Below are positions 6,544 to 50,675 of a stretch of 64,000 bases of DNA, in pieces. Position 1 is the stretch's first letter. Each line of letters starts with the position of its first letter. The notes beneath the pieces are model-generated. The model worked only from the letters and a program-made list of their open reading frames with translations, was not told the origin of the DNA and ran no database searches. The stretch lies in IMG/VR virus record IMGVR_UViG_3300023179_005186, positions 1-64,000 of that record. The stretch is one strand, 5' to 3'. A program made the translations under genes and the position numbers.

Positions 6544-7545
6544 TTACTTAATAAATTTCATAATATTTTCTATTATGTTATCTACTATAATAGGATGTTC
6601 TTTAAACATAACGTGAGCACATTTTGAAGGTAATGATGGATCTGAATAATTTGGAATTTCTATAATAGGAATTGGATAACCCCATGTTTTTTGTATTATA
6701 TTTCTTTGTTCATAAATCGAACCAATTACTTTGTCATCATTTGGATATAGTATAGCTATATTTTCAGCAGTAATTTTTTTAGGACGAAATTTTTTAAATT
6801 CAATTAATTTATGATCTAAATCAAATGAACTTGCAATATCATAATAATCTTTTTCACCTTCTTCATCATAATTTGTATCTCTACAAAATTTATAATAATC
6901 TAATGATTTTATTCTTAAAGGAATGAATAATTTTATAATAAATCTTATAAATGGACCAAATAAACTTGAAAAAATTAAATATTTTAATGGATGTGGATAT
7001 TCAATTAAAAATGGAGCACATAATATTAAATTTGATATTTTACATTTATAATTAAATTCAGATTGAGTTAAATATAATGCAATTACACAACCAGTTGAAA
7101 TTCCTATAATATCAACAGTTTCATATTGTGCTTCTAAAACTTTTAATGCTTCTAAATATGTTAATATCCAATCATTAGGGTGATTTGGTTGAAAAAAAGA
7201 TCTACCATTTCCATATGTTCTTGGAGCATAATAATCTATTGAATTTAATTCAAAATATTTAATAAGTTTATCCCAAAGATATGGTATATCTCTATAACCT
7301 GATATTAATAAAACACATCTTGATTTTTTTTTAACTGTATAAAATCTACTTAATGATACTGAATAAATATTTAGTTCCTTTTCCCAAAAGGTCTTCCTTG
7401 GAAATAATCTATCTAATCTATTAAAATTTTTTTTTATACAATAATAAGAATAAAGATTTCTTGTTATATAAATTAATCCAATAATAGAACTTATTATTAC
7501 TACTGTTTTCTCTTTATTAATTTCAAATATTTTATTACAAATCAT
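6544..7545 (-). CDS. membrane-anchored alpha/beta hydrolase (esterase/lysophospholipase-like)
   Basis: N-terminal hydrophobic helix, LLISGY oxyanion region, GISTG nucleophile elbow, DDKVI acid, CAHV His. Confidence 0.8.
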   Translation of the reverse strand: MICNKIFEINKEKTVVIISSIIGLIYITRNLYSYYCIKKNFNRLDRLFPRKTFWEKELNIYSVSLSRFYTVKKKSRCVLLISGYRDIPYLWDKLIKYFELNSIDYYAPRTYGNGRSFFQPNHPNDWILTYLEALKVLEAQYETVDIIGISTGCVIALYLTQSEFNYKCKISNLILCAPFLIEYPHPLKYLIFSSLFGPFIRFIIKLFIPLRIKSLDYYKFCRDTNYDEEGEKDYYDIASSFDLDHKLIEFKKFRPKKITAENIAILYPNDDKVIGSIYEQRNIIQKTWGYPIPIIEIPNYSDPSLPSKCAHVMFKEHPIIVDNIIENIMKFIK

Positions 7546-36734: not shown

Positions 36735-37583
36735 TTAATATTCAGGTTTAATAGCCTTAAATTTAATTGATAATTTAGAAATTAATTTATACATATCATC
36801 ACTTAATATTTTATCTATTGTACCATAATGAATAATATTTATTTTAAACCATATTTTAATAATTACACATGCAGAATTAATACTTATATGATCTAACTTT
36901 CTTGGACTAAAAGATAATCCATTGACTACATTCCAAGTATTCTGAGAAAATTTTAATAAAGTATTATTTACCATTTGATAACAAAATGATTTTAATATAT
37001 TATATGCTTCTTCTAATGAATCAATTTTAATTTGACATAAAGAACCATTTCTATTATCAATATCTTCCCATAAAGGACTAATATCTCTTTTCATAATAAA
37101 AATATCAAAATCAGAATATGAACTTTCTCCAGAAGCTATATTTAATGTATTAAAAAATTTTGGTACATCACCCCATTTATTTAAAGTTGTAATATTATGA
37201 TAACTTAAAAAATCCCAATTTTTATCATCATTATGATGAGCTAATACTCTAAAATAATTAGTCATTTTATTTTCAAAAAAATTTTCTTCAAATTGTTTAT
37301 ATTCACATTCAATAACTGGTTTCTTCTTATTATTTGAAACAATAAGAAATTCTTCATCATTATTTAAATTTTGATTTATATTCTTATTATATTTATTTTT
37401 TGAATCTTTTTTAACAGTAAAATATTTAAAAACTTCTTCTTCTAATTTATCTAAAACAGGAGAACCTATTGTTTTATTATTGGTATTAATTATCGTTTTT
37501 GTCTCTTCGTCATCACTTTCTTCATTTAATAATGAAAAACGATTACTACCTGCTTTATTTTCTAATAACTGTTTTTCAGACAT
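36735..37583 (-). CDS. eIF4E: cap-binding translation initiation factor eIF4E
   Basis: NWDFLSY..I.TL, FIMKRDISPLWEDIDNRNGS, VNGLSFSP, IKIW. Confidence 0.9.
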   Translation of the reverse strand: MSEKQLLENKAGSNRFSLLNEESDDEETKTIINTNNKTIGSPVLDKLEEEVFKYFTVKKDSKNKYNKNINQNLNNDEEFLIVSNNKKKPVIECEYKQFEENFFENKMTNYFRVLAHHNDDKNWDFLSYHNITTLNKWGDVPKFFNTLNIASGESSYSDFDIFIMKRDISPLWEDIDNRNGSLCQIKIDSLEEAYNILKSFCYQMVNNTLLKFSQNTWNVVNGLSFSPRKLDHISINSACVIIKIWFKINIIHYGTIDKILSDDMYKLISKLSIKFKAIKPEY

Positions 37584-37621
37584 TTTAACTATATATTAAA
37601 TAATAATTAATTAATTTTTAA

Positions 37622-37629
37622 TCAATTTT
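37622..37629 (-). promoter_or_regulatory. early promoter AAAATTGA (eIF4E)
   Basis: exact octamer about 39 nt upstream of the start. Confidence 0.8.
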
Positions 37630-37662
37630 TTTTATTATATAAAATTATTATTTTTTTTTGTA

Positions 37663-38739
37663 TTACTTTTCTAAATAAAAAATTGATAAGAATGATATTA
37701 ATTGAATATTATCATTATTACAATATGTTAAATTTTCATTTATTAAACATAAATTTTTAATTATACTAACTACTTTTTCCATTTTATACTTGATTATTTC
37801 TTTATTATTATTTATAATAAAGTCTATAAAATAATCATAAACATAATTTATTAATTCAGCAAGAGATATACCATTTTCTATAGTTAAATTATTTACATAA
37901 TTATATGATTTATTAAAATCATTTTTTTGAATAAAACTAAGTATTTGAACTATATGTTTATGTGTAGGACATGATAATATTTTTGATATACTTGTTTCAT
38001 TTATAATTATTTGATTTGAATTAATTTTATCAGAATTAGATATTATTTCTGATTTTTTACAAATAATATTATCCAAATACATATTAACTGATTGTAAAAT
38101 ATTTAATAATTTTCTCATATCACCAGATGATCTTTTAATTATTAATTTTATTGCATTTGAAGTAATTTGTAAGTTTTCTTTTTTACAAATAGATATTACA
38201 AAACTATAAAGATAATCAAATGGTATTGGATTAAATCTAAAAATTACACATCTTGATTGTATTGCTGGATTAATTTTTTTAAGATAATTACAAATAAAAC
38301 AAAATCTAACATTTGATACATATTTTTCAATTACTTTTCGCAATATAGCTTGTGCATCTTCAGTCATTGCATCTATTTCGTCTAAAATTATTAATTTAAA
38401 AGTTGGTGTATTTGGATTTTCAGAAATACCTTTTGTTATTACAAATTGTTTTATTCTATTTCTAACTGTTTCTATACCACGTTCTTCTGAAGCATTTAAT
38501 ACTAATATCATATTGTCATAATCTTCACCATAATAATGTTTGGCCACTGCTATTATTAATGAAGTTTTACCTGTTCCAGGTGGACCATAAAATAATAAAT
38601 GTGGTAACTTTTTATGATCCATATAATTTACTATTGCTTTAGTTATTTTTTCATGATATATAATATTATTTATTGCAGATGGTCTGTATTTTTCTGACCA
38701 TGGTAAATTATTATATTTTTTTAAACTAGATAATGACAT
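37663..38739 (-). CDS. RFC: replication factor C small subunit
   Basis: PWSEKYRP, GPPGTGKTS, LNASEERGI, ILDEIDAMT, AIQSRC. Confidence 0.97.
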   Translation of the reverse strand: MSLSSLKKYNNLPWSEKYRPSAINNIIYHEKITKAIVNYMDHKKLPHLLFYGPPGTGKTSLIIAVAKHYYGEDYDNMILVLNASEERGIETVRNRIKQFVITKGISENPNTPTFKLIILDEIDAMTEDAQAILRKVIEKYVSNVRFCFICNYLKKINPAIQSRCVIFRFNPIPFDYLYSFVISICKKENLQITSNAIKLIIKRSSGDMRKLLNILQSVNMYLDNIICKKSEIISNSDKINSNQIIINETSISKILSCPTHKHIVQILSFIQKNDFNKSYNYVNNLTIENGISLAELINYVYDYFIDFIINNNKEIIKYKMEKVVSIIKNLCLINENLTYCNNDNIQLISFLSIFYLEK

Positions 38740-38867
38740 TATTTAACTATTATCTATATATATTAATTAATATTTAATAGGATTTACAAATTTTTTAATT
38801 TTATATATTTTAAATAAATTTATAAAAATTATTATATAAATTAATTTTTATACAAATTTTTTATATA

Positions 38868-38875
38868 AAAATTGA
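38868..38875 (+). promoter_or_regulatory. early promoter AAAATTGA (RPB1)
   Basis: exact octamer about 46 nt upstream of ATG 38921. Confidence 0.85.
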
Positions 38876-38920
38876 TTTTATTTATAAATAATATAAAGTA
38901 ATAGAATATATATATATATC

Positions 38921-39955
38921 ATGAATGTTCATAGGTATAATGAGAAGACATCCTCAATTGAAAGGATTGATTTTACAATCCTTGGTAATAAGGAAATCAA
39001 AAATATGTCTGTGTTAAATGATAAATCTGGTCCTGGTCCAGGATTAGTTGTACCTGATTTATATGATAATACTGAACCCAAAAAAGGTGGTCTTATTGAT
39101 CAACGAATGGGTGTTACTTCAAATGAACTAGAATGCACAACATGTGGTTTAAGTACAAACTATTGTGTTGGTCATTTTGGTCATATGGAATTAGCAGAAC
39201 CAGTATTTCACATGGGATTTTATGATTATGTCATCTCAATTTTAAGATGTGTATGTATTAAATGTTCTAAAATATTAGTTTATAAAAATGAAAAAGAAAT
39301 TATGGATATTTTAAAAAATAAAACAGGTAAAGGTAGACTTAATGAAATTAAAAATTTAGTTAAAAATGTTACTTATTGTCAAAAAGCTTTTTATGGATGT
39401 GGTGCACCAGTACCTAAAATAAAATCTGATAAAAAAAAAACAAGTGAAGTATATATTGTTGCTGAATATTTATTATCTTCTTCTACTGAAGAAGATCTAG
39501 AAAAAAAACCGATTAAAGAAACATTAACACCAAATTTAGTTTATAATATATTAAAAAATATTTCTGATACAGATTGTATGATAATTGGATTTGATCCAAA
39601 AAAAAATAGACCTGAAGATTTAATTCACACTATTTTTCCGGTACCTCCTGTACAAGTTAGACCTTCTGTTAGAGGTGATTTTGGTTCTTCTACTACACGT
39701 GAAGATCATTTAACTGTGATACTTTCAAATATATTAAAAGCTAACATTAGAATGAATAAAAATAAAGAAAATGTTACAGAAAATTCATTAAAATATATAC
39801 CTGATCATACTACTTTACTTCAATATCATGTAGCTGTTTATTATGATAGTGATTCTCTTAAAATTCCTGAAACTCAAAGAAAGAATATCACTACTAAATC
39901 ATTAAGTACACGTTTAAAAGGTAAAGAAGGACGTATTCGAAATAATCTGATGGGT
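38921..39955 (+). CDS. RPB1: RNA polymerase largest subunit, exon 1 (345 codons)
   Basis: Zn sites CTTC..CVGHFGH and CVC.KC; PPVQVRPS; ends RLKGKEGRIRNNLMG at U39955. Confidence 0.95.
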
Positions 39956-41321
39956 AATCTGTTTCTCTAGGAAAGAAACAATAGCTTGCTCACAATAGGC
40001 GACTGCTTATTTGGTTGTTGTATCACCAAATAAGGAAAACAGTATAAATACAATCTAGTAATAGTATATAATCGTCTAGTGGATAAATTAAATTATTTAT
40101 CTGCAACACTTCCAAATTGCGGGAACATCTAATTTTGCATTTGCAAATAACTATTTTATACTTCCAGAATATTGAAAAATATTTTGTAATCAACGGAGAA
40201 ATTCGTTAAAAAATAATATGCTTAAAAATTAAAATATATAAAAAGATATATGAAAAATGAATATTGGTGAAATTTATAAAATTACTAATTTAATAAATAA
40301 TAAAATATATATTGGTAAAACTAAAAAATATTATAAAAATATTGAATTTGGTTATTTAAAACGTTTTATTAATCACAAAGTATCAGCAAATTCAGAATCT
40401 AAAAAAAATGATTGTCCTAGACTATATAATGCTATAAGAAAATATGGTAATAAAAATTTTAAAGTCGAAATGATTCATGAATGTGAATTAAAAATCATTG
40501 ATGAAAAAGAAATTGAATTTATAAAAAAGTACAATTCAACTGACAGAAATATAGGTTATAATATCGCCCTTGGTGGTGGTGGTCGTAGTGTTGTTAATAT
40601 ATCTGAAGAAATTCGTTATAAAATTTCAAAGAAACAAAATACTGAACATCCAATGAATATTAAACCTTATTTAAAAAACAATGTACTTGTTGGTTATACA
40701 GTTCAACGAAGAGAAAATGGTATGGTTTTTAGAAAATATTTTACAAATTCTAAAAATATTCCAGAAATTAATCTTGAACTTGCAAAAAACTGGTTAAATG
40801 ATATAATAGATAACAAAATCGATAATACAAATATTAACAAATATAATAGAGATAGTAATTTACCAAAAAATATATATCAAATTATTGAAAATGATAAATT
40901 AGTTGGTTATAAAGTAAATATAATGATTGATGGAAAAAAATATACAAAATCATTTCAATCAAATACTACACTAATTGAAGAGCTTTTGCAAAAAGCTATT
41001 AAATATAAAGAAAGCATATTAAACAGTTATAATTAAAATAGTGAACTGGGAAACCAGTATTAGACAATCCGCAGCCAAGTTCCTAAGTATATTTTTAATA
41101 TATATGGAAAAGGTTCAGAGACTAGATGGTAGTGGGTACTTGAATTTTTAATTCTTGTGCTTAAGGTATAGTCCGTGTCTTGGTGACAAGACTTCCAACT
41201 TTTAAGGAGTTGGGGTTTAAATGATTTAAAATAGTTATTTAAGCTAGTAGATATCAACCTAGACCTAAAGGTTAAATTAATTTAAAAACTAATTTAGCCC
41301 ATGGTTGAAGATATCGATTCG
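39956..41321 (+). mobile_element. group I intron 1 of RPB1 (1366 nt)
   Basis: 5' exon ends in U, intron ends in G. Core P AAATTGCGGGAA 40114-40125, Q AATCCGCAGC 41066-41075, R GTTCAGAGACTAGA 41113-41126, S AAGGTATAGTCC 41163-41174. Splicing restores LMG|KRTDFSGR. Confidence 0.93.
40257..41036 (+). CDS. intron-encoded GIY-YIG homing endonuclease
   Basis: GEIYKITNLINNKIYIGKT, KRFINH, LYNAIRKYG, E.EFIKKYNS..GYN; AP2-like C-terminal DNA-binding units. Confidence 0.9.
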   Translation: MNIGEIYKITNLINNKIYIGKTKKYYKNIEFGYLKRFINHKVSANSESKKNDCPRLYNAIRKYGNKNFKVEMIHECELKIIDEKEIEFIKKYNSTDRNIGYNIALGGGGRSVVNISEEIRYKISKKQNTEHPMNIKPYLKNNVLVGYTVQRRENGMVFRKYFTNSKNIPEINLELAKNWLNDIIDNKIDNTNINKYNRDSNLPKNIYQIIENDKLVGYKVNIMIDGKKYTKSFQSNTTLIEELLQKAIKYKESILNSYN

Positions 41322-41747
41322 AAGAGAACAGATTTTTCGGGGCGTACAGTAATTACGCCTGATCCAAACTTATCTATTAATGAACTTGGAATGCCAATAA
41401 CAATTGCTATGAATATAACATTTCCAGAAATAGTAACTCCTCATAATAAGGATTATTTGGAAAAATTAGTTAGAAATGGTCGTGAAGTTTATCCAGGAGC
41501 TAATTTTATTATTCCTGCAACTTTAAGTGATTCGGATTCCAAGTCAATTATTGATTTAAGATTTAGAAAAAATAAAATTGAATTAAGATATGGTGACATT
41601 GTAGAAAGACATACAAAAAATAATGATATTGTTTTACTCAATCGTCAACCAACTTTACATAAACAAAGTATGATGGGACATAGAGTTAAGGTTATTAATA
41701 ATCCTAACTATTGTACGTTTAGAATTAATCCTAACGTAACAACTCCT
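41322..41747 (+). CDS. RPB1: RPB1 exon 2 (142 codons)
   Basis: [15 protein letters not shown] ... [14 protein letters not shown] ... [10 protein letters not shown]. Confidence 0.95.
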
Positions 41748-43072
41748 TAATGTCAGGGAGTAAAAGCATGAGAAAAACCTTATGCTAGTTTGCTAACAAT
41801 TTATATTAATTGTTATACAAGCGAAATAGTGATATGCGGGAAAGTCCTAAAGTTTTAGATACTAAGTTGAATAAAGAAATTTGTTTGATGGCTTTGGTGA
41901 AAAATCAAGGGTATAGTAAAAATTCTAAAAATAATTAAAGTATTTTAAAAATTATTTAATATAGATATAATAGCTATGGATGAAAGTCAAGATACTGGAG
42001 TTATATATTGTATTGAAAATATAATCACACATAAAAAATATATTGGTCAAGCAAAATCTTATATATTAAAAAAAGGTAAAATTGTTAAACACGGTTTATC
42101 AGGTAGGTTTAAAACACATTTAAAAAGTGCTTTTTCTGGTAAAAATAGTTGTCCTAAATTATACAATTCAATTGTAAAGTATGGATATAAAAGTTTTTCC
42201 ATATCTTTATTAGAAATTTGTTATTTAGAATTTTTAAATGAAAAAGAAACTTTTTACATAAAAAAATTTAATACTGTAGAAGATGGTTATAATATATTAT
42301 ATAGTAATTCAACAATTCATAAAAACTTTGATAGTAGAAAAAATGTTATTGAAAAAATATCAAATACTATGAAAGATAAATGGTCTAATGATGAACAATA
42401 TATAAATAAAACTACTAAAAATAATCTTAAAGCAGTTATTGAAAGAACCAAAAGAGGAACTAGAATTATAAACAAAGAATTACCAAATAATATATATAAA
42501 ACAAAAAATGGTTTTGATATAAGAATAATGAGAAATGGTGTATATAAAATTACATCAGTTGAAAGTAAAATTTTAACTCATGAAGAACTTATTTTAAAAG
42601 CAATTGAGAAAAGAGACAAAATATTTGAACAAATTAAAAATAATGATGTGATTAATTTTCAAAAAAAATATGACCACAATGGTAATGATTTACCAATTGG
42701 TATTCATCTTAAAAAAGCAAGAAATCAAGATGCATATGGAGTAAAAATTATTATTGATGGTAAAATTTATGAAAAATGTGTATCTGATAAAAAACTTTCA
42801 ATGGATGAAAAATTAATAAAAGCTAAAATATTATTAAATGAATTAAAAATACTTTATAAAATGGAAAATCCGCAGGTTCAAGTCTAAATTCGTTATGATA
42901 GAATATGACAAGGACCTCAGAGACTACGTTGCTATTGGTCAATAATGATAGTTTAATCAACTGGAATTGGCTTAAGGTATAGTCCACTCCCACAGGAAAC
43001 TGTGTATACAAGTAGAATTGTATAAGATTGTGATAACAAGAGGAAATGCTTGTTTGAATCTGGTATTTAAGG
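41748..43072 (+). mobile_element. group I intron 2 of RPB1 (1325 nt)
   Basis: P1: exon ACUCCU pairs with GGGAGU (41756-41761) with a U-G wobble at the splice site. P TGCGGGAA 41835, Q AATCCGCAGG 42867, R CTCAGAGACTAC 42916, S AAGGTATAGTCC 42974; terminal G43072. Confidence 0.93.
41976..42887 (+). CDS. intron-encoded GIY-YIG homing endonuclease
   Basis: GVIYCIENIITHKKYIGQA, GRFKTH, LYNSIVKYG, E.FYIKKFNT..GYN; repeated LP.NIY/LPIGIH AP2-like units. Confidence 0.9.
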   Translation: MDESQDTGVIYCIENIITHKKYIGQAKSYILKKGKIVKHGLSGRFKTHLKSAFSGKNSCPKLYNSIVKYGYKSFSISLLEICYLEFLNEKETFYIKKFNTVEDGYNILYSNSTIHKNFDSRKNVIEKISNTMKDKWSNDEQYINKTTKNNLKAVIERTKRGTRIINKELPNNIYKTKNGFDIRIMRNGVYKITSVESKILTHEELILKAIEKRDKIFEQIKNNDVINFQKKYDHNGNDLPIGIHLKKARNQDAYGVKIIIDGKIYEKCVSDKKLSMDEKLIKAKILLNELKILYKMENPQVQV

Positions 43073-43096
43073 TACAACGCAGATTTTGACGGTGAT
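43073..43096 (+). CDS. RPB1: RPB1 exon 3: 24-nt micro-exon encoding YNADFDGD (catalytic Mg2+-binding motif)
   Basis: TAC AAC GCA GAT TTT GAC GGT GAT between omega-G43072 and intron 3; joins TTP|YNADFDGD|EMN in frame. Confidence 0.95.
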
Positions 43097-43598
43097 AGAT
43101 CATTTTGTCACCAACAGCAAGCTGCCAATTAAGTTACTATTCATACTTAATTGGGTAAACAGTGTAAGAATAGTCTAGATATAACTTGCTAGTCTTGTTT
43201 TAAATAAGGCAAGATTACCAATTTGTTCGGGAACCCCTTAAAGCACTACATACTAAACATAATTTGAAAAAATTATGTGGTTTTGCGCAATGGCAAAAAT
43301 TTTTCATAGCAGAATATAATAAACTTTTAAATATACTTAAAAAAAGCTATGAAATAAGTAAAAATTGTAGTGATATTCCTAAAGGATAATAGGAAACCCG
43401 CAGCCGGTCATCTAAGTTCGTTTGATAGAATATGATGATGGTTCAGAGACTTGATGGTAGTCGGTCGGTAATGAAGGTCTAATCAACCTGAACTGGCTTA
43501 AGATAAAGTCCAATTGTCTTCCGAAAGGAAGAATGAAAGATATTTTAAAAATATAAACCTAAGTCAATAAAATGATATGGTTTATGGATATCTTCATG
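43097..43598 (+). mobile_element. group I intron 3 of RPB1 (502 nt, no ORF)
   Basis: P1: exon GGUGAU pairs with GUCACC (43107-43112) with a U-G wobble. P10: UCAUUUU (43100-43106) pairs with exon 4 GAAAUGA. P 43226, Q AACCCGCAGC 43395, R GTTCAGAGACTTGA 43441, S AAGATAAAGTCC 43500; terminal G43598. Confidence 0.93.
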
Positions 43599-46500
43599 GA
43601 AATGAACATTTTTGCACCTCAGAGTATTGAAACCCAATATGAATTAGAGGAAATTGCAGATTTAAAATTACAAATAATTACACCTCAATCTTCTTCACCA
43701 ATTATAGCGATGAAGCAAGATCAATTATTAGGTGCATATAATTTAACTTCTGAATATTATAAATTAGATTGGAGAACTACTATGAATTTATTAGCGTCCA
43801 CTCAAATGGAATCACTTGATAATGTTCCTAAAAACAAAGATTATGCTGGAAAAGAAATTTTCTCTTATTTAATTCCTAAAAAAATTAATCTTATGAAGGG
43901 TGATCCTACTAAACCAACTATTTTAGTTAAAAATGGTATTATGGAATCAGGTATTTTAGGGGATGATTCGCTAGGTGTAAAAAAATCACCTAGTTTAGTA
44001 CAATTAGTCTGGGATGAATATGGTGTTGAGAAAACAAAAACTTTTTTGGATAATACTACCAAATTAGCAAATAACTTTAATTTATTTCACGGTATGACTG
44101 TTGGTATTAAAGATCTTTATATCAGTAATGAACTTGATAATAAAATGCAACAGACTTTTGATACTAAAAAATTAGAAATTCAACATGAAATTACTGAAAT
44201 TGAAAATAATCCAGATATGATGGATGGTGATCTTTTTGAAATGTCCGTTAATCAAAAATTATCAGTTATTCGTGATGATGTATCCAAAGTTATTATGGCT
44301 AGTATGACTAAAGAAAATAATTTTAGGATTATGATTGAATCTGGATCAAAAGGTAAACCAATTAATATCACTCAAATGGCTGGATTAGTTGGTCAACAAG
44401 ATTATCATGGTGGACGCATATTGAAAAACTTTAATAATAGATCTTTACCTTATTTTTTTCAAAATGATGATCGTGCCGAATCAAGAGGTTTTATTGAAAG
44501 ACCTTTTATGCATGGATTAAATATCTCAGAATTTATTTTTCATCATCTATCTTCTAGAGAAGGTCTAATTGATCAAACTGTGCGATCTGTTACTCCTGAT
44601 ACTAGAATTACTATTATTGAAAATTCGATTCCCAAAACTGTTGAAATAGGTCCTTGGATTGATTCGATAATTAAAATAAAATCTGATCAAGTCGAACACG
44701 ATGTTAACGAATTTGAATTAGTTAATGTAACTGGTATTACAATCCCAACTGTTGACTCTGTTGGAAAAGTTACTTGGGCTAATGTAACTGCAGTTACTAG
44801 ACATGCTAAAGGAAATCAATTGTTTGAAATCGTAACTAGAGGTGGTAGAAAAGTTAAAGTTCCTGAATCTAAATCACTTTTGATCTGGAATAATGAGACT
44901 AAACAATTTGAAGATAAACTTACTCCAGATGTTAAAGTCGGAGATTTCGTTCCTGTTACAATGAATTTACCTCAACCTCCTATTATAAATAATCATATTG
45001 ATATGACAGAATTTAAAATACAGGAAGAGAAAGATTCGTTATTACCAGATAAATTTATATTAAATAAATTAAATGGTCAATTCATTGGATTATTCTTAGC
45101 TGATGGTAATGTTAATTATGAAAATGGCTATATACATTTAAATAATTGTAATGAAAATGTGTTAAACTTTATTAAAAAGTACTTTGACGGTCTAGATATT
45201 AGTTATAATGAGAATAAAAAAATATTAGAAATAGAAACTATTACTGATATTAGTGGTTATTCTAGAATTTTATGCAAGTTCCTATATGCTACTTGTGGTA
45301 ATGATGCTTATGAAAAACATGTTCCTGATTTTGCATTCAATGCTCCTGAAGAGTTTGTTATTGGACTAATTGATGGATATATATCTAGAAATGCTTGTGT
45401 AACCGAATCCTCTATTACTACCTTATCTTGTTCATTAAAGTTAATTGATGGAATTAATATGTTATTAAATAGAATTGGTGTATTTTCTAAAATTAGTACT
45501 CATAAATATGATAACAAAAACAATGATATTAAAGCCAATTATAATATTATTGAAATTGGTATTAGAGCACAATGGGTGCGCAAATTTAAATCTAAAATGA
45601 TATCTCTAATTAACTTTAATAAAAATGATAAATTTTATAAAATAGAAAGTTCAACAATTACTCATACAAATTACATAGAACAAGAAGATGTTGTACTTGA
45701 TCAAATTGTTGAAATTAATCAACTTAATCCTGAAAATTATCCTAAACTATATGATTTAACTGTTCCTGGAACTTTTAACTTTATAATAAGTAATGGAATG
45801 GGTTGTCGAGATACTGCAGATAGTGGTTATATTCAAAGAAAGCTAATCAAATCAACTGAAGATTTCATGGTAAATTATGATGGTACAGTTAGAAATGCTG
45901 TAGGTAGAATTCAACAATTCGTGTATGGTGAATCAGGTGCAGACACAGTTAAACAATATGAATATAAATTTCAAATAATGGAACTTTCAAATTCAGAAAT
46001 TGCTAACAAATTTAAATTTACTAAAGAAGAACTTACTAAAGTCAAAAATTTTACTGAATCTGATAATAATAAATTTTATCAAAATATATTAAAATGTCGT
46101 GATCATTTAAGGTTTACTCAAATGAAATCAACTGTTGAATATAAAATTCTTAATATAAAATACATGTTACCAGTTAATATATATCGTATTATAAATAATA
46201 TTAGAAATGATCCTGATAAAAAAGGTAATGTAAATTATGATTGTGAATATATTCTAAACTTAATTGATAGAATTTTAGAAAGTAAAAATACCAAGTTATA
46301 TTGCATGACTGAAGAAGAAATGAAAGATGAATCTTCTATTAAATATAAAGATGATCAAATGGCAAAGACAGCCTTAAAATATGCTTTATTAGAATCACTT
46401 GCTCCAAAAAAATGTATTTATACTTATAAATTTACAAAGGAACAGTTAGAAGATGTAGCTACTGATATTATTTCAAGTTTTAACTCAAGTATTGTTGAAC

Positions 46501-48464
46501 CAGGCGAAATGGTTGGAATTATTGCTGCACAAAGTTTAGGTGAACCAGTTACACAGCTTATGTTAAATAGCCTTGACTGGACTGAAGAAATACTTATTCA
46601 TGATTCAAAATCAAATCAGGATACAGTTTTACCTATTGGTCAATTTATTGACAACTTAATTGATAATAATAAAGGTCAGGTAACTAATCCTATTGATAAC
46701 TTGGAAGCTGAAATGAAAAATATTTATTATCTAGATACAAATGATTGTAATTATCAAATCAAGTCAGTTGATGAAAATGGTAAAGTATCATGGAAAAAAA
46801 TAGAAGCAGTTACAAAACATTTACCTATTAATAAAGATGGTACTAATACTTTAATTAGGGTAACAACTAGAACTGGTAAATCTGTTATTGCTACTAAAGG
46901 AAAATCATTCTTAACACAAAAAAATAATAAGATTGTTCCTATTAGGGGTGATGAATTAGAAATTAAAACTTGTTTACCTATAATGAATAAATGTTTAAAT
47001 TTAGATGGTATTACCTATGAATATTATAAACATAATATTCATAATATACAAGAATTTGGTGATGTGTTTATGGATGAAATTATATCAATTGAAGATATTC
47101 AACCAACAAACACTTATGTTTATGATTTTACTGTTCAAGATACTAAAACATTTATTATTTCAAATGGTTTATGTTGTATGGATAGCTTTCACTCGTCAGG
47201 AGTAGGTGGTAAAGGTAGTAAAAGTATTGGTGTTGATCGAATCAAAGAAGTTTTTAGTTTATCAAAAAATCCAAAAGAACCAATAATGATGATTTATTTG
47301 AATAAAGAACATAGAGAAAAGAAAGATTTTGCGAATAAAATAGCTTCTCACATTAAATTTACCACCATTAAAGACTTGAGGACTAAAATTGAAATATATT
47401 ATGATCCTAAACCTTATAGTAAAAATGGATTTATGGAAAAAGATAACATTAATACTATATTCTATACTTATCAACAATCTAAACAATGTTGTGCTAATAC
47501 TATTGATGGATTACCTTGGTTAATGAGAATTGAATTTGATAGAGAAAAATTACTTTCTAAAGAAGTTTCTCTTTTAGATATTAAATCTCAATTCTGTTTT
47601 AGTTGGGAAAAACGTTATCAAGATATTAAAAGTGTTAAACGAGAAAAACGTGTTATTTTAGAAAAAATTTCACAATTAGCTGTATTATCTAACACTGATA
47701 ATGATGATATACCAACAGTGCATTTAAGATTCGATATGACTAACTTTAATTCATCTACATTAATTGACTTTATGGATATGTTTGTTGATGACTTTAAACT
47801 TAAAGGTATGTCGAATATTGATGATATTAGAGGTGGTGGTAAAGCAATTGAAGAACGTTATATTAGTTTTGATAATCCTGAAAATTCTTTTGAAAAGAAA
47901 AATGAATATGTCGTTTATACTAATGGAATTAACATGTATGATATTCGAAATATTATAGGTATTGATTTAACTAGAACTTATTGTAATGATATTATTACCA
48001 CTTATGAAATATTTGGTATTGAAGCTGCACGTAATCTTATTATACGTGAAATTATTAATGTATTATCTTCCAATGGTTCTGGTACTAACTATCAACACAT
48101 TGGTATGTTTGGTGATTTAATGACTAATCAGGGAACTTTAACATCAATAGATAGACATGGTTTAAATAAATTAGATACTGATCCATTCTCTAGAGCATCA
48201 TTTGAAAAAACTGTTGATCAATTAATTACTGCTGCAGTATTTAATGAAGTTGATCATATGAAATCAGTTTCTTCTAGAATTATGGCTGGTCTTTGTATTA
48301 AAGGTGGTACTGGTTTATGTGATCTAATTTTAGATAAAGATTTGTTAGAAAATTCAGAATACACTATAGATATTGGACAATTATACAATAAAACTTATCA
48401 AGATATTACTGTTCAACAAAAACAACAAGAAATAGATATTGAAGTATTTATTCCTGATTTATAA
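43599..48464 (+). CDS. RPB1: RPB1 exon 4, containing two inteins
   Basis: EMNIFAPQ, SGSKG, REGLID, GYIQRK, GIIAAQSLGEP, FGIEAAR, ASFE. Removing all introns and inteins gives about 1502 aa. Confidence 0.96.
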   Translation, partial: EMNIFAPQSIETQYELEEIADLKLQIITPQSSSPIIAMKQDQLLGAYNLTSEYYKLDWRTTMNLLASTQMESLDNVPKNKDYAGKEIFSYLIPKKINLMKGDPTKPTILVKNGIMESGILGDDSLGVKKSPSLVQLVWDEYGVEKTKTFLDNTTKLANNFNLFHGMTVGIKDLYISNELDNKMQQTFDTKKLEIQHEITEIENNPDMMDGDLFEMSVNQKLSVIRDDVSKVIMASMTKENNFRIMIESGSKGKPINITQMAGLVGQQDYHGGRILKNFNNRSLPYFFQNDDRAESRGFIERPFMHGLNISEFIFHHLSSREGLIDQTVRSVTPDTRITIIENSIPKTVEIGPWIDSIIKIKSDQVEHDVNEFELVNVTGITIPTVDSVGKVTWANVTAVTRHAKGNQLFEIVTRGGRKVKVPESKSLLIWNNETKQFEDKLTPDVKVGDFVPVTMNLPQPPIINNHIDMTEFKIQEEKDSLLPDKFILNKLNGQFIGLFLADGNVNYENGYIHLNNCNENVLNFIKKYFDGLDISYNENKKILEIETITDISGYSRILCKFLYATCGNDAYEKHVPDFAFNAPEEFVIGLIDGYISRNACVTESSITTLSCSLKLIDGINMLLNRIGVFSKISTHKYDNKNNDIKANYNIIEIGIRAQWVRKFKSKMISLINFNKNDKFYKIESSTITHTNYIEQEDVVLDQIVEINQLNPENYPKLYDLTVPGTFNFIISNGMGCRDTADSGYIQRKLIKSTEDFMVNYDGTVRNAVGRIQQFVYGESGADTVKQYEYKFQIMELSNSEIANKFKFTKEELTKVKNFTESDNNKFYQNILKCRDHLRFTQMKSTVEYKILNIKYMLPVNIYRIINNIRNDPDKKGNVNYDCEYILNLIDRILESKNTKLYCMTEEEMKDESSIKYKDDQMAKTALKYALLESLAPKKCIYTYKFTKEQLEDVATDIISSFNSSIVEPGEMVGIIAAQSLGEPVTQLMLNSLDWTEEILIHDSKSNQDTVLPIGQFIDNLIDNNKGQVTNPIDNLEAEMKNIYYLDTNDCNYQIKSVDENGKVSWKKIEAVTKHLPINKDGTNTLIRVTTRTGKSVIATKGKSFLTQKNNKIVPIRGDELEIKTCLPIMNKCLNLDGITYEYYKHNIHNIQEFGDVFMDEIISIEDIQPTNTYVYDFTVQDTKTFIISNGLCCMDSFHSSGVGGKGSKSIGVDRIKEVFSLSKNPKEPIMMIYLNKEHREKKDFANKIASHIKFTTIKDLRTKIEIYYDPKPYSKNGFMEKDNINTIFYTYQQSKQCCANTIDGLPWLMRIEFDREKLLSKEVSLLDIKSQFCFSWEKRYQDIKSVKREKRVILEKISQLAVLSNTDNDDIPTVHLRFDMTNFNSSTLIDFMDMFVDDFKLKGMSNIDDIRGGGKAIEERYISFDNPENSFEKKNEYVVYTNGINMYDIRNIIGIDLTRTYCNDIITTYEIFGIEAARNLIIREIINVLSSNGSGTNYQHIGMFGDLMTNQGTLTSIDRHGLNKLDTDPFSRASFEKTVDQLITAAVFNEVDHMKSVSSRIMAGLCIKGGTGLCDLILDKDLLENSEYTIDIGQLYNKTYQDITVQQKQQEIDIEVFIPDL
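44586..45812 (+). mobile_element. RPB1 intein A (409 aa; Ser1...Asp C-terminus, +1 Thr) with LAGLIDADG-type domain
   Basis: LIDQTVR|SVTPDT ... FIGLFLADG ... IGLIDGY ... YDLTVPGTFNFIISNGMGCRD|TADSGY; removal restores the bridge-helix sequence. Confidence 0.9.
46569..47183 (+). mobile_element. RPB1 intein B (205-aa mini-intein; Ser1...Asp C-terminus, +1 Ser)
   Basis: GEPVTQLMLN|SLDWTE ... YVYDFTVQDTKTFIISNGLCCMD|SFHSSG; removal restores the trigger-loop sequence. Confidence 0.9.
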
Positions 48465-48516
48465 TTTTAAAAAATTTATTTATTATTAAAAAATTTATTT
48501 ATTATTAAAAAAATAT

Positions 48517-49224
48517 TTAGTAATTTTTCATTCTTACAAGTTTATCAACGTTAAACCTATTAAAATTTTCAAGCTTTTCATCTTCAGTTAAATCTAAACT
48601 AAGTTTATTTTTATACTTGATAAATCTTGAATCTTTTTTATTATTTATGATTGCACAATCATAATTTTCCTTTATATTTTTTAACTTTATAAAATTTTTA
48701 CCTCTTGTAATTAATATTTTATCTATTTTTTCTATATCTTCATTCGATAGTTTAGGTCCCATAGTTATTATTGAAAAATTATGTTCAGGTGGTAAATAAC
48801 AATCAATTATTGGTAATCTGAATAAATATTTCTCAGGATTTGAACCTCTTGATTTTATTTCTAAATCAGGACCAGCTCCCACTAAATCACCATAATATCC
48901 TTCAAATTGTCCTTCAGGAGGATTCCACAATCCTTTAAATCTATTCAAATAATAATAATTATACAGATTAAATGCATTAAAACATAATGGTCCTATTGGA
49001 TCTTCATCTATAATCATTCCAGTATATGGATCCCATCTATAATTATATTCAAATAATAAATTACTTGGTATTTCTTGATCAGTTAATGGATCTATTTTAA
49101 ACTGTCTTTTAATTCTATATATTTCGGTAGTTGTTTTATCATATTTTTTTAAATTTGTTAAATTATTCTTATTTATAACATGATTTCCTTTTAAATCGTC
49201 AAAATCTATATAGTTAAAATCCAT
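48517..49224 (-). CDS. conserved Mimiviridae hypothetical protein
   Basis: WDPYTG....DPIGPLCF...YYGDLVG.G...RG..PE.YLFRLP..DCYL. Confidence 0.8.
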   Translation of the reverse strand: MDFNYIDFDDLKGNHVINKNNLTNLKKYDKTTTEIYRIKRQFKIDPLTDQEIPSNLLFEYNYRWDPYTGMIIDEDPIGPLCFNAFNLYNYYYLNRFKGLWNPPEGQFEGYYGDLVGAGPDLEIKSRGSNPEKYLFRLPIIDCYLPPEHNFSIITMGPKLSNEDIEKIDKILITRGKNFIKLKNIKENYDCAIINNKKDSRFIKYKNKLSLDLTEDEKLENFNRFNVDKLVRMKNY

Positions 49225-49379: not shown

Positions 49380-50675
49380 ATGAGTCGTAAAATTGTATTT
49401 GAACCTATTGCCTTTGAAGATGAAAGGCAAAAAAAATCAACTCAATTTAGTACTACAGTTGGATTAATGAAGGATGGAAAAAAAGTATATCCTGATGAAA
49501 CTACCGGCTTTATGTACCAAATGTATTCTGGATTTGCATCATCAATGTTTAATCCTCCTGAAAATCGTGATTGGATTAAACTTGATATTAATGAAAATGA
49601 AAATACTTATGTTGAATTTATGAATACTATCAATGAGTATGATAATGAATTTGAAAAACAAAAAGATAATATTTTTGGTAAATTTTCTAAATTTTACAAT
49701 ATTGTTCGATCTGTTAAAGAGCCTAAAGAAGATGATGAACTTGAAATGGAAGCTAATGCTGATAAACCTGTTAAACCTAAATATAAATCAATTAAATTAA
49801 AACTAAAAATGGGTTGGAATTATTATTATGATAATGTTTTACTCGATCAAATTAATGCATCAATTATCCGTAAATCTGTTAACGAAACTCTTGCAAAAAA
49901 TAATGATAAGAAACTACTAGAAAACCTTACTTTTACACTTAAAATTACTGATGAAAATGGAAAAAAAATAGATAAGAAAATTAAAATGAGTGAAATCGAA
50001 TCTCGTAAGGAAATTATTACTAAAGTTTATTATCGTCAAAAAGATGATTCTGTTGACCTTAAAAAAGTTACTGATTGTACTGATAATGATGAATTAGAAG
50101 AAATTTATGGTAAACCTGAAGAAGTATTTGTAAAAACACCTGAAGATTTTGATAGATATCATAAATATAGATGTTTTGTTCGTTATCTTTATTCACCTTC
50201 TAAAGTTTGGGCTTCAAAATCTAAAGGTGATGATGGTAAACGTAGAACAAGTCTTCAATTTGTATGTCATCAAATTGATATTATACACATTAAAGAAAAA
50301 AAAAATAATACATCTGCTGTTCGTTCAATTTATTCTGGATATGGATTTGGCTCAAGACCTGATACTGTTTTTGATGTAACTGAGAAAGGTATTGACAAAT
50401 TAGAAAAAGAAACATCTATTCCAAAAAATAAAATTAAAGATAAAGATAAAGATGAAGATGAAGATGAAGATGAAGATGAAGATGAAGATGAAGATGAAGA
50501 TGAAGACGAAGATGAAGAAGATAAAGAAGATAAAGAAGTCATTAAATCTAATAAACATACATTAAAAGTTGAATCTGATTCTGATTCTGATGAATCAAAA
50601 CCTCCTAAAAAAAATTCTAAAAATAAAATTGTTGAACAAGTAAAAACTACAAAAAAGAATACTAAACGTAAGTAA
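49380..50675 (+). CDS. putative ssDNA-binding protein (DUF2738/OB-fold-like) with acidic tail
   Basis: alternating beta-strand pattern with aromatics (KVW...SLQF.C.QI.I) followed by (DE)n tract, as in phage-type SSBs; assignment by resemblance. Confidence 0.5.
   Translation: MSRKIVFEPIAFEDERQKKSTQFSTTVGLMKDGKKVYPDETTGFMYQMYSGFASSMFNPPENRDWIKLDINENENTYVEFMNTINEYDNEFEKQKDNIFGKFSKFYNIVRSVKEPKEDDELEMEANADKPVKPKYKSIKLKLKMGWNYYYDNVLLDQINASIIRKSVNETLAKNNDKKLLENLTFTLKITDENGKKIDKKIKMSEIESRKEIITKVYYRQKDDSVDLKKVTDCTDNDELEEIYGKPEEVFVKTPEDFDRYHKYRCFVRYLYSPSKVWASKSKGDDGKRRTSLQFVCHQIDIIHIKEKKNNTSAVRSIYSGYGFGSRPDTVFDVTEKGIDKLEKETSIPKNKIKDKDKDEDEDEDEDEDEDEDEDEDEDEEDKEDKEVIKSNKHTLKVESDSDSDESKPPKKNSKNKIVEQVKTTKKNTKRK
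50451..50520 (+). repeat. (GATGAA)n hexamer tract encoding (DE)n
   Basis: direct reading of the sequence. Confidence 0.9.

What the first reader, a model, noticed from the sequence alone, without database searches (positions are those of the whole stretch)
38921..48464. One RPB1 gene carrying five selfish elements at its most conserved motifs
Seen: three phase-0 group I introns (at LMG|KR, TP|YNADFDGD and DGD|EMN) and two inteins (bridge helix, trigger loop). About 5.0 kb of the 9.5-kb locus is parasitic, and removing all five gives a ~1502-aa RPB1. Established: introns and inteins in RNA polymerase genes are reported for Bodo saltans virus and other Mimiviridae. Inference: this density implies frequent co-infection and homing competition, and three RNA-splicing plus two protein-splicing events are needed to make the enzyme.
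Basis: partly seen in the sequence, partly recalled or inferred. Interest (0 to 1): 0.65.

Follow-up and report, generated by a model that had tools for sequence, protein, structure and literature searches.

The report
Giant-virus RPB1 gene with five selfish inserts
The gene for the largest RNA polymerase subunit of an uncultured freshwater giant virus is interrupted by three self-splicing group I introns and two inteins at its catalytic motifs; this kind of invasion is already described for Bodo saltans virus, but this copy is the most heavily loaded of about 58 full-length relatives compared.

Summary
Exons are 38921-39955, 41322-41747, 43073-43096 (24 nt, YNADFDGD) and 43599-48464. The three phase-0 introns are 1366, 1325 and 502 nt. 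Each follows a U, ends in G, has an internal guide sequence complementary to its 5' exon, and carries the P/Q/R/S group I core. Introns 1 and 2 hold intact GIY-YIG homing-endonuclease ORFs.

Two HINT inteins lie at 44586-45812 (409 aa, LAGLIDADG) and 46569-47183 (205 aa, mini). They sit at yeast K830|T831 (bridge helix) and N1082|T1083 (trigger loop). Removing all five elements gives a 1502-aa protein. It is 84% identical to an element-free, syntenic allele and ungapped at all five junctions.

In 80 related loci the same sites are occupied variably: 27 of 58 full-length genes carry no element, and only the window carries five. A 94%-identical sister strain has a different intron 3 nt away and a different endonuclease content. 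That fits ongoing homing and decay.

Both inteins are atypical: Ser1, Lys in place of the block B His, and a terminal Asp. These features are conserved in about 80 alleles.

No RNA evidence for splicing was obtained. Contigs from one RNA library are unspliced and look like DNA carry-over.

Verdict: real and correctly read; a new member of a known kind.

The parts
38921..48464 (+). RPB1 (largest RNA polymerase subunit) gene, start codon to stop codon, 9544 nt
   Evidence: Pfam Rpb1 domains 1-7 lie in order across the exons. The spliced ORF is 6351 nt and the mature protein 1502 aa.
38921..39955 (+). Exon 1 (345 aa), ending ...RIRNNLMG; last base is T
   Evidence: Aligns to human RPB1 17-356 and ends exactly at G356. 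Rpb1_1 E=8e-81.
39956..41321 (+). Group I intron A (1366 nt). Guide sequence GCTCA(C) at 39988-39993 pairs with exon UGGGU. P 40118, Q 41067, R 41115, S 41163; terminal G at 41321.
   Evidence: A covariance model built from relatives only hits 41067-41205 at 117 bits, E=6e-30. The 3' core is 73-78% identical to the L002/L003/L004 orthologues, and the ORF-less L002 orthologue scores 94 bits on Rfam RF00028.
40257..41036 (+). Intron A ORF, 259 aa, GIY-YIG homing endonuclease, inserted in the P5 loop
   Evidence: GIY/YIG/Arg/Glu/Asn motifs are readable in the translation. PHROG homing-endonuclease families match at E=9e-21, and the GIY-YIG family at 1.4e-11. Pfam SegE_GIY-YIG scores 22.3 bits, below the cut-off of 25.
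41322..41747 (+). Exon 2 (142 aa), KRTDFSGR...NPNVTTP; last base is T
   Evidence: Aligns to human RPB1 357-491 end to end. Rpb1_2 E=2.5e-45.
41748..43072 (+). Group I intron B (1325 nt). Guide sequence GGGAGT at 41756-41761 pairs with exon ACUCCU. P 41835, Q 42868, R 42917, S 42974; terminal G at 43072.
   Evidence: Model R1 hits 42868-43016 at 116 bits, E=1.6e-29. The core is 71-73% identical to L002/L004 B' introns, and the L002 copy scores 67 bits on RF00028.
41976..42887 (+). Intron B ORF, 303 aa, GIY-YIG homing endonuclease, a paralogue of the intron A ORF. Its last 20 nt overlap the ribozyme Q/P6 core.
   Evidence: BLASTP against the intron A ORF gives 31% identity over the full length, E=5e-20. 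PHROG homing-endonuclease families match at E=5e-14.
43073..43096 (+). Exon 3, a 24-nt micro-exon encoding YNADFDGD (the metal-A aspartates; yeast 478-485)
   Evidence: Sequence read directly. It fills exactly the 8-residue gap between the PDB alignments of exon 2 and exon 4, and is identical to the element-free allele.
43097..43598 (+). Group I intron C (502 nt, no ORF). Guide sequence GTCACC at 43107-43112 pairs with exon GGUGAU. P 43226, Q 43396, R 43443, S 43500; terminal G at 43598.
   Evidence: Rfam RF00028 gives a full-length match of 44.2 bits, E=5e-10 (gathering score 50). Model R1 gives 127 bits, E=1e-32. The guide sequence covaries with the Gly codon third base in 11 orthologues.
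43599..48464 (+). Exon 4 (1621 codons plus stop), EMNIFAPQ... to the C-terminus, containing both inteins
   Evidence: Open frame. Rpb1 domains 3-7 plus Intein_splicing and LAGLIDADG_3.
44586..45812 (+). Intein 1 (409 aa) in the bridge helix, between R|T (yeast K830|T831). Ser1, block B ...PESK..., terminal Asp, +1 Thr. LAGLIDADG motifs at 45087-45113 and 45363-45389.
   Evidence: Intein_splicing 56 bits and LAGLIDADG_3 43 bits. The flanks abut on PDB RPB1. The element is absent from P0005/L092. It is about 75 aa shorter than the 480-485-aa alleles.
46569..47183 (+). Intein 2 (205 aa mini-intein, no endonuclease) in the trigger loop, between N|S (yeast N1082|T1083). Ser1, block B ATKGK, terminal Asp, +1 Ser.
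   Evidence: Intein_splicing 47.8 bits. The nearest solved structures are archaeal TFIIB mini-inteins 5o9i/5o9j, E=3e-10. It is a paralogue of intein 1, E=2e-9. The sister strain has a 535-aa version with an endonuclease.

Best explanation
This is the functional RPB1 gene of an uncultured, very AT-rich (20% GC) Mimiviridae-like giant virus from lake water. It has been invaded by five mobile elements.

The roughly 9.5-kb primary transcript must lose three group I ribozymes by guanosine-initiated self-splicing. The P1 helices are UGGGU/GCUCA, ACUCCU/GGGAGU and GGUGAU/GUCACC, and the terminal G residues lie at 41321, 43072 and 43598. Splicing joins four exons, one of them only 24 nt and encoding the catalytic NADFDGD loop.

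The resulting 2116-aa precursor must then excise two related HINT inteins from the bridge helix and the trigger loop. The expected chemistry is a Ser1 N-O shift, transesterification to Thr or Ser at +1, and cyclisation of a terminal Asp instead of Asn. The product is a 1502-aa enzyme.

Introns A and B carry paralogous GIY-YIG homing endonucleases, and intein 1 carries a partly deleted LAGLIDADG endonuclease. Intron C and intein 2 have lost theirs. The elements persist because they sit in invariant, essential sequence, and they spread or decay through the homing cycle during mixed infections.

Shown: the anatomy, the exact boundaries, homology to confirmed group I introns and inteins, covariation of ribozyme helices and guide sequences, and polymorphic occupancy in relatives. 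Inferred: that splicing actually occurs, that the endonucleases are active, and that co-infection drives the pattern.
For: - Exact residue-level abutment of the pieces on solved RPB1 structures.
- Ungapped 84.4% identity of the predicted mature protein to an element-free syntenic allele, and blastn blocks that break at the predicted boundaries.
- Every intron follows a U and ends in G.
- Rfam RF00028 matches intron C full-length at E=5e-10. ORF-less orthologues of all three introns score 94, 67 and 69 bits.
- A covariance model built without window sequences hits exactly the three predicted cores in 64 kb, at 116-127 bits.
- Across 48 cores, 94.8% of cells are paired, 215 cells show changes on both sides, and 0 of 500 shuffles reach this.
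- Guide sequences track the synonymous third base of the Gly and Ala codons at the splice sites.
- The intron ORFs match homing-endonuclease PHROGs at E=9e-21 and 5e-14.
- Both inteins exceed the Pfam Intein_splicing cut-off and match solved mini-inteins.
- Ser1, terminal Asp and Thr/Ser at +1 are invariant in 59 and about 20 alleles, while intein-free alleles may have Ala at +1.
- Two DNA data sets from different studies carry the same junctions.
Against: - No spliced RNA was seen. Contigs from a metatranscriptome library (X4) run unspliced across four of the six intron boundaries (both ends of intron A, the 5' end of intron B and the 3' end of intron C). X4 contigs do not reach the 3' end of intron B or the 5' end of intron C. 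These contigs share break points with a DNA run of the same study, so they are probably DNA carry-over, but unspliced pre-mRNA cannot be excluded.
- Rfam gave no hit to introns A and B in their native form, and intron C is below the gathering score. The likely reason is the 0.17-0.95-kb inserts in the P5 loop.
- Both inteins lack the canonical block B His, the penultimate His and the terminal Asn.
- Intein 1 lacks about 75 aa present in most alleles.
- How the internal endonuclease ORFs would be translated in a eukaryotic cytoplasm is unknown.
Confidence: 0.85

Rival explanations
1. The gene is a decaying pseudogene or a permanently split gene. On this view the inserts are not removed, and the virus relies on another RPB1 copy, the host polymerase, or separately translated fragments.
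For: No spliced RNA was found, and RNA-library contigs are unspliced. The contig is only about 28% of a genome by CheckV, so a second copy cannot be excluded. The inteins have non-canonical catalytic residues.
Against: All exons are intact and in phase, with no internal stop. Identity to an uninterrupted allele is 84%. A 24-nt exon encoding the catalytic aspartates cannot work as a separate product. Ribozyme helices and guide sequences show compensatory change. Intein termini are invariant across about 80 alleles. In Bodo saltans virus the same kind of gene was shown to be spliced (PMC5871332).
Confidence: 0.05
2. All five elements are spliced, but they are now fixed, immobile passengers. The pattern would then reflect ancient invasions inherited vertically, not current homing or competition between co-infecting viruses.
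For: Intron C and intein 2 have no endonuclease, and intein 1 has a 75-aa deletion. The BsV authors judged the RNA polymerase inteins fixed. The bridge-helix intein is present in 59 of 79 database alleles with very conserved ends.
Against: Two intact paralogous GIY-YIG ORFs are present. Occupancy is patchy even among close relatives: none of the five sites is occupied at 84% identity. The 94% sister strain has a different, endonuclease-bearing intron 3 nt away, an ORF-less intron B and full-length endonuclease inteins. An A-type intron core sits at site C in L005, with a retuned guide sequence.
Confidence: 0.25
3. The layout is an assembly chimera of several strains or of unrelated intron-containing contigs.
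For: The contig is metagenome-derived. Many short, spurious joints appear in the source run.
Against: A single 8588-nt contig in X1 spans 39592-45400 with no differences. X2, from another study and sampled five years earlier, covers every junction with 0-1 differences. The sister contig L091 has the same order of elements.
Confidence: 0.01

Closest known systems
Bodo saltans virus polr2a/polr2b (Deeg et al. 2018, eLife; PMC5871332)
   Same: This is a Mimiviridae RNA polymerase large-subunit gene. It is interrupted by several related group I introns, some with GIY-YIG or HNH endonuclease ORFs and some ORF-less 'offspring', and by inteins as well. The authors give the same interpretation: homing elements in essential genes that act in competition between viruses. 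The paper also notes fragmented polymerase genes in catovirus and klosneuvirus.
   Different: This is a different virus, an uncultured freshwater contig with 20% GC. The exact insertion sites in BsV could not be compared here because figures are not held. BsV splicing was verified by RT-PCR, whereas this gene has no RNA evidence. BsV inteins were judged to lack endonucleases, whereas intein 1 here keeps both LAGLIDADG motifs.
Phage T4 td/nrdB group I introns with the GIY-YIG endonucleases I-TevI and I-TevII (own knowledge)
   Same: A group I ribozyme carries a free-standing GIY-YIG endonuclease ORF looped out of a peripheral helix. It is inserted in highly conserved coding sequence of an essential enzyme and is mobile by homing during mixed infection.
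   Different: The host is a eukaryotic-virus RNA polymerase gene. Three introns lie within 3.6 kb, two of them only 24 nt apart. The ORF sits in the P5 loop. PHROG similarity is only at family level.
Archaeal TFIIB mini-inteins (PDB 5o9i, 5o9j) and archaeal rPol A'/A'' inteins (cited in PMC1635734)
   Same: HINT splicing domain. These are the best solved-structure matches to intein 2, at E=3e-10. Inteins in the archaeal homologues of the largest RNA polymerase subunit are on record.
   Different: Whether the archaeal rPol inteins occupy the same sites was not tested. The TFIIB inteins have the canonical block B Thr-x-x-His, where the window inteins have Lys at the His position.
Inteins with a terminal Asp or Gln (Amitai, Dassa and Pietrokovski 2004, PMID 14593103, cited in PMC1635734), and inteins lacking the block B His (Tko/Pho CDC21-1; own knowledge; weak match to PDB 6rpq)
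   Same: Non-canonical catalytic residues that are still compatible with splicing. PMC10710043 notes atypical C-terminal residues in Nucleocytoviricota inteins.
   Different: Here both deviations occur together, with Ser1, and are invariant in about 80 RPB1 alleles at two different sites. Activity is untested.
Haloarchaeal MCM helicase with four neighbouring intein sites (PMC10643990)
   Same: One essential gene has several closely spaced insertion sites, where neighbouring elements can interfere with one another's homing.
   Different: That system involves inteins only, in archaea. Here a mix of introns and inteins is involved, and insertion sites lie as little as 3 nt apart.

Membership tests
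Group I self-splicing intron (Rfam RF00028) | Conserved catalytic core (P3-P8, with the P/Q/R/S consensus elements) | tested here: met
   P, Q, R and S are found in order in all three introns. Intron C gives a full-length RF00028 match at E=5e-10. A relatives-only covariance model gives 116-127 bits on all three. P6, P7 and P8 covary.
Group I self-splicing intron (Rfam RF00028) | Score at or above Rfam's gathering threshold (50 bits) | tested here: inconclusive
   Window intron C scores 44.2 bits. Introns A and B give no hit in native form because they carry 0.8-0.95-kb ORF inserts in the P5 loop. Their ORF-less orthologues in L002 score 94, 67 and 69 bits.
Group I self-splicing intron (Rfam RF00028) | U at the end of the 5' exon, paired with G in a P1 helix formed with an internal guide sequence | tested here: met
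   All three 5' exons end in T, and guide sequences of 5-6 bp are present. Guide sequences covary with codon third positions at sites s2 and s4 in relatives.
Group I self-splicing intron (Rfam RF00028) | Terminal G at the 3' splice site | tested here: met
   G at 41321, 43072 and 43598.
Group I self-splicing intron (Rfam RF00028) | Guanosine-dependent self-splicing | not testable with these tools
   Requires an in vitro assay or RNA data. The RNA-library contigs were unspliced and inconclusive.
GIY-YIG homing endonuclease | N-terminal GIY...YIG module with conserved Arg, Glu and Asn | tested here: met
   ORF A shows GEIY...IYIGKT...R...E...GYN, and ORF B shows GVIY...KYIGQA...R...E...GYN, both read. 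The PHROG GIY-YIG family matches at E=1.4e-11 and 2.9e-8. Pfam scores are below cut-off, at 22.3 and 16.6 against 25.
GIY-YIG homing endonuclease | Site-specific cleavage of the intron-less allele | not testable with these tools
   A candidate target is available in the empty allele L092.
Intein (HINT protein-splicing domain) | In-frame insertion at a conserved host site that is absent from close homologues | tested here: met
Intein (HINT protein-splicing domain) | Intein_splicing/HINT domain above the curated cut-off | tested here: met
   56.0 and 47.8 bits against a cut-off of 35.8. PDB mini-intein match at E=3e-10.
Intein (HINT protein-splicing domain) | Nucleophile at position 1 and at +1 | tested here: met
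   Ser1 with Thr+1, and Ser1 with Ser+1. These are invariant in 59 and about 20 alleles.
Canonical class 1 intein catalytic set | Block B Thr-x-x-His, and a C-terminal His-Asn | tested here: not met
   Block B reads PESK and TKGK, with the Lys conserved at over 90%. The termini read ...R-D and ...M-D, with the Asp invariant. These are therefore filed as atypical inteins, not canonical ones.
LAGLIDADG homing endonuclease (intein 1) | Two LAGLIDADG motifs with acidic residues, in an intact DNA-binding scaffold | tested here: inconclusive
   Both motifs are present (GLFLADGNV, GLIDGYISR), and Pfam LAGLIDADG_3 scores 43 bits. However, about 75 aa upstream of the first motif are missing relative to the 480-485-aa alleles.

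The most novel reading that the evidence does not exclude
The roughly 30 nt that encode TP-YNADFDGD-EMN in Mimiviridae-like RPB1 genes may be a previously uncharted battleground for group I introns. At least seven distinct insertion sites were seen (P|Y, D|F, FD|GD, G|D, D|E, inside the Met codon, and others). Up to three introns are stacked there, leaving micro-exons of 24, 21, 17, 12 and even 6 nt. Related ribozymes have retuned their guide sequences to new sites. Non-homologous introns occupy positions 3 nt apart in strains that are 94% identical. This suggests that introns exclude or displace one another by destroying each other's target sites. In parallel, a conserved intein class with Ser1, block B Lys and a terminal Asp occupies the bridge helix and trigger loop.
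Probability: 0.45. Interest if true: 0.6.

Novelty: new member of a known kind. Interest (0 to 1): 0.5.

Why it matters
The enzyme can only be made if five autocatalytic reactions all succeed, so the gene is a natural stress test of how much parasitic load an essential gene can carry.

The comparison set offers ready material for studying the homing cycle, intron-intron exclusion, and minimal exon requirements for group I splicing in eukaryotic viruses. That set comprises an element-free allele, a sister strain with swapped endonuclease content, and relatives with 6-24-nt micro-exons.

The Asp-terminated, His-less inteins are conserved enough to be worth testing as a distinct mechanistic variant. 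In practical terms, gene callers split this RPB1 into fragments, which affects the marker-gene phylogenies used for giant-virus metagenomics.

Tried and rejected
- **Rfam over the whole locus.** Scanning 38500-49000 at E<=1 gave no group I hit. Only a narrow scan recovered intron C. Introns A and B had to be identified through ORF-less orthologues and a custom model.
- **RNA evidence.** One search for runs and one laying of reads were allowed. The metatranscriptome X4 holds 68% of the sampled words, which at first looked like a spliced transcript. Its contigs, however, run unspliced across four of the six intron boundaries and share loose ends (40324, 42194, 43529, 43893) with the DNA run X2 of the same study. 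They were judged to be DNA carry-over and are not used as evidence either way. The joints listed for X1 have only 20-22 nt on one side and were dismissed as spurious.
- **Spliceosomal introns.** Rejected, because the inserts do not have GT..AG ends and they carry group I cores.
- **Early-promoter octamer AAAATTGA.** It occurs 46 nt upstream of the ATG, but the motif is no more frequent in the window than chance (31 seen against 33.6 expected), so it is not used.
- **Supplement of PMC10710043.** This covers atypical intein termini in giant viruses, but it is not held.
- **Not attempted.** Exact BsV insertion sites (figures are not held), archaeal rPol A'/A'' site comparison, structure prediction of the inteins, and group I subgroup assignment.


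Full report

ORF listing of 37.5-50 kb shows four in-phase RPB1 pieces on the + strand, separated by non-coding or foreign-ORF stretches. Pfam places Rpb1 domain 1 in the first piece, domain 2 in the second, and domains 3-7 in the last. The last piece also contains Intein_splicing and LAGLIDADG_3 matches.

Joining 38921-39955, 41322-41747, 43073-43096 and 43599-48464 gives a 6351-nt ORF with one terminal stop. All exon lengths are multiples of three, so the introns are phase 0. Introns are 1366, 1325 and 502 nt, and inteins are 409 and 205 aa. Inserted sequence is therefore 5035 of 9544 nt.

**2. Are the boundaries exact?**

Each piece was aligned to solved RPB1 structures:
- Exon 1 ends at human G356, and exon 2 covers 357-491.
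- Exon 4 starts at 500, leaving 492-499 for the 8 residues YNADFDGD of the 24-nt exon.
- The N-extein ends at 853, the middle extein covers 854-1105, and the C-extein starts at 1106.

In yeast numbering the inteins lie at K830|T831 and N1082|T1083. From my own knowledge of Pol II, these positions are in the bridge helix and the trigger loop.

A database relative, P0005 (1498 aa), is a single uninterrupted ORF. The predicted mature protein is 84.4% identical to it, with no gap at any of the five junctions. Its contig (L092) has the same gene order of eIF4E homologue, RFC small subunit and RPB1. The blastn blocks between it and the window break at 39957/41322, 41749, 43599, 44585/45808 and 46568/47196.

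**3. Is it an assembly artefact?**

No. Contigs from the probable source run X1 include one 8588-nt contig covering 39592-45400 with no differences. Contigs of X2, from a different study and sampled in 2013 rather than 2018, cover every junction with 0-1 differences.

**4. Are the introns group I introns?**

- All three follow a T and end in G.
- The classical P, Q, R and S consensus elements occur in order in each.
- Rfam found nothing in a scan of the whole locus. A narrow scan matched intron C to RF00028 over the full model (44.2 bits, E=5e-10, gathering score 50). The alignment shows a roughly 170-nt insert in the P5 loop.
- In introns A and B the same loop holds the 0.8-0.95-kb ORFs, which explains the misses.
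- The relative L002 has ORF-less introns at the corresponding places, and these score 94, 67 and 69 bits.
- The window's 3' cores are 73-82% identical to their positional counterparts in L002, L003 and L004.
- A covariance model built only from eight relatives' cores hits the 64-kb window exactly three times, at 41067-41205, 42868-43016 and 43396-43542, with 116-127 bits.
- Over 83 sources it finds 48 cores, all in the RPB1 orientation. In their alignment 94.8% of cells are paired, against 77% for shuffles and 23-52% for slid registers. There are 215 cells with changes on both sides, and P6a, P6b, P7 and P8 all show compensatory change. That alignment was fitted to the model, so these numbers lean towards the structure.

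Independent of that model, the P1 guide sequences track synonymous variation of the exon. At DGD|EMN the Gly codons ggT, ggA, ggG and ggC face GUCACC, GUCUCC, GUCCCC and GUCGCC. At NAD|FDGD all four Ala codons have matching guides.

For the window the P1 helices are:
- UGGGU/GCUCA for intron A.
- ACUCCU/GGGAGU for intron B.
- GGUGAU/GUCACC for intron C.

**5. The intron ORFs.**

The ORFs in introns A and B are paralogues (31% identity, E=5e-20). They show GIY, YIG, Arg, Glu and Asn motifs. They match PHROG homing-endonuclease families at E=9e-21 and 5e-14, including a GIY-YIG family. Pfam matches are below cut-off. The last 20 nt of ORF B overlap the ribozyme Q/P6 core. Intron C has no ORF.

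**6. The inteins.**

Both exceed the Pfam Intein_splicing cut-off, at 56 and 47.8 bits against 35.8. They are related to each other (E=2e-9 and 1e-8). Intein 2 matches the solved archaeal TFIIB mini-inteins at E=3e-10.

That alignment, together with family alignments, shows a Lys where the block B His normally sits (ATKGK and PESK). It also shows Asp at the terminal position in place of Asn, with no penultimate His.

Among the 120 best database relatives:
- 59 carry the bridge-helix intein. All begin SV(T), end in D and are followed by T.
- About 20 carry the trigger-loop intein. All begin S-x-D-W, end in D and are followed by S or T.
- Intein-free alleles often have Ala at +1.

This conservation argues that the atypical residues are functional. 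Splicing with a terminal Asp has precedent (Amitai et al. 2004, cited in PMC1635734). PMC10710043 mentions atypical C-terminal residues in Nucleocytoviricota inteins.

Intein 1 keeps both LAGLIDADG motifs but is about 75 aa shorter than most alleles. Intein 2 has lost the endonuclease that the sister strain retains.

**7. Comparative picture.**

Eighty related RPB1 loci were fetched from IMG/VR and chained with tblastn against the mature protein.

| Site | Occupied / loci covering the site |
|---|---|
| LMG\|KR | 3/80 (closest clade only) |
| Catalytic loop | 27/78 |
| Bridge helix | 16/68 |
| Trigger loop | 15/62 |

| Elements per full-length gene | 0 | 1 | 2 | 3 | 4 | 5 |
|---|---|---|---|---|---|---|
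| Number of genes (of 58) | 27 | 16 | 8 | 5 | 1 | 1 (the window) |

Both tables come, and the counts are rough.

Inside the catalytic loop the insertion points differ: P|Y, D|F, FD|GD, G|D, D|E and inside the Met codon. L015 and L027 have three introns there, with micro-exons of 12+17 and 12+12 nt. L055 has a 6-nt micro-exon.

The window's intron B is homologous to the B' introns of L002 and L004 but sits 12 nt upstream, with a different guide sequence.

The 94%-identical sister contig L091 differs in three ways:
- It has the same intron B without its ORF.
- It has a different intron at FDG|DEMN, 3 nt from the window's site, which carries a 227-aa endonuclease-like ORF.
- Both of its inteins have full endonuclease domains.

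**8. Mechanism.**

The best-supported reading is an essential gene that needs three ribozyme-catalysed and two protein-catalysed splicing steps. The elements appear to be at different stages of the homing cycle. Rival readings (pseudogene or split gene, fixed immobile passengers, chimera) are weighed in the Rival explanations section.

The main gap is RNA evidence. A metatranscriptome library (X4) contains the locus, but its contigs are unspliced across four of the six intron boundaries. They also share break points with the DNA run of the same study, so they most likely reflect DNA in the library.

**9. Comparison with known systems and novelty.**

The Bodo saltans virus paper describes the same phenomenon in polr2a and polr2b. 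It reports related group I introns with and without endonucleases, inteins, RT-PCR proof of splicing, and the interference-competition hypothesis. It also notes fragmented polymerase genes in klosneuvirus metagenome assemblies (PMC5871332). The finding is therefore a new member of a known kind.

Features that seem not to be described in the held literature are:
- the extreme load of this copy;
- the fine-scale multiplicity of insertion sites in the NADFDGD-coding stretch, with its micro-exons;
- the conserved intein variant with block B Lys and a terminal Asp at two RPB1 sites.

Noticed in passing
G000:C1 about 133300-140850 (locus L011 4300-11846): The RPB2 gene of the same contig is also invaded. 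It has an intein of about 430 aa in domain 3 (Intein_splicing, Hint). A LAGLIDADG-like ORF is fused in frame after Rpb2 domain 6, followed by a group I core (RF00028 58 bits; model R1 73 bits at L011:10658-10785). There is also an unexplained insert of about 150 aa between Rpb2 domains 6 and 7.
   Followed up: partly
L055:8781-8786; L015:9729-9740 and 10171-10187; L027:8743-8754 and 9088-9099; L091 about 1607-1627: In relatives, micro-exons of 6, 12, 17 and 21 nt lie between adjacent group I introns inside the NADFDGD-coding stretch. At least seven different insertion points occur within about 30 nt across loci.
   Followed up: partly
L091:1628-2706: The sister strain (94% aa identity) has, in place of the window's intron C, a different intron 3 nt upstream at FDG|DEMN. 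It carries a 227-aa Cys-rich ORF of the same family as the L001 intron ORF, which matches PHROG endonuclease / endonuclease VII families only weakly.
   Followed up: partly
L036:11344-11532 and L070:8571-8717: Group I intron cores, not inteins, lie within a few codons of the bridge-helix intein site in two distant relatives.
   Followed up: no
L005 about 13560-15010: A canonical intein (Ser1 ... His-Asn | Thr) sits in the trigger loop three residues upstream, at TQM|TLN, of the Asp-terminated intein site. The trigger loop therefore has at least two intein sites.
   Followed up: no
L092:5450-5460 and about 7225-7235, compared with window 41745-41747 and 47184-47186: In the element-free allele the Pro codon before site B is CCG, so there is no U for a group I 5' splice site. 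The residue after the trigger-loop site is Ala, so there is no nucleophile for an intein. These states would make the empty allele incompatible with the elements as they stand.
   Followed up: partly
window 36735-38739 (- strand): An eIF4E-like ORF and a replication factor C small-subunit ORF lie directly upstream of RPB1 and are divergently oriented. The same order is found in L092 and L093 (Pfam IF4E, Rad17/AAA/Rep_fac_C).
   Followed up: partly
window 38868-38875: The octamer AAAATTGA lies 46 nt upstream of the RPB1 start codon. It is known to me as the mimivirus early-promoter motif, but it is not enriched in the window (31 seen against 33.6 expected).
   Followed up: yes
window 39500-45400 in run X4: A library labelled metatranscriptomic holds this locus as unspliced contigs with the same break points as a DNA run of the same study. 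It probably contains viral DNA.
   Followed up: partly
window 50400-50560 (ORF 49380-50675): A 431-aa ORF downstream carries a long acidic DEDEDE... low-complexity run. Its function is unknown.
   Followed up: no
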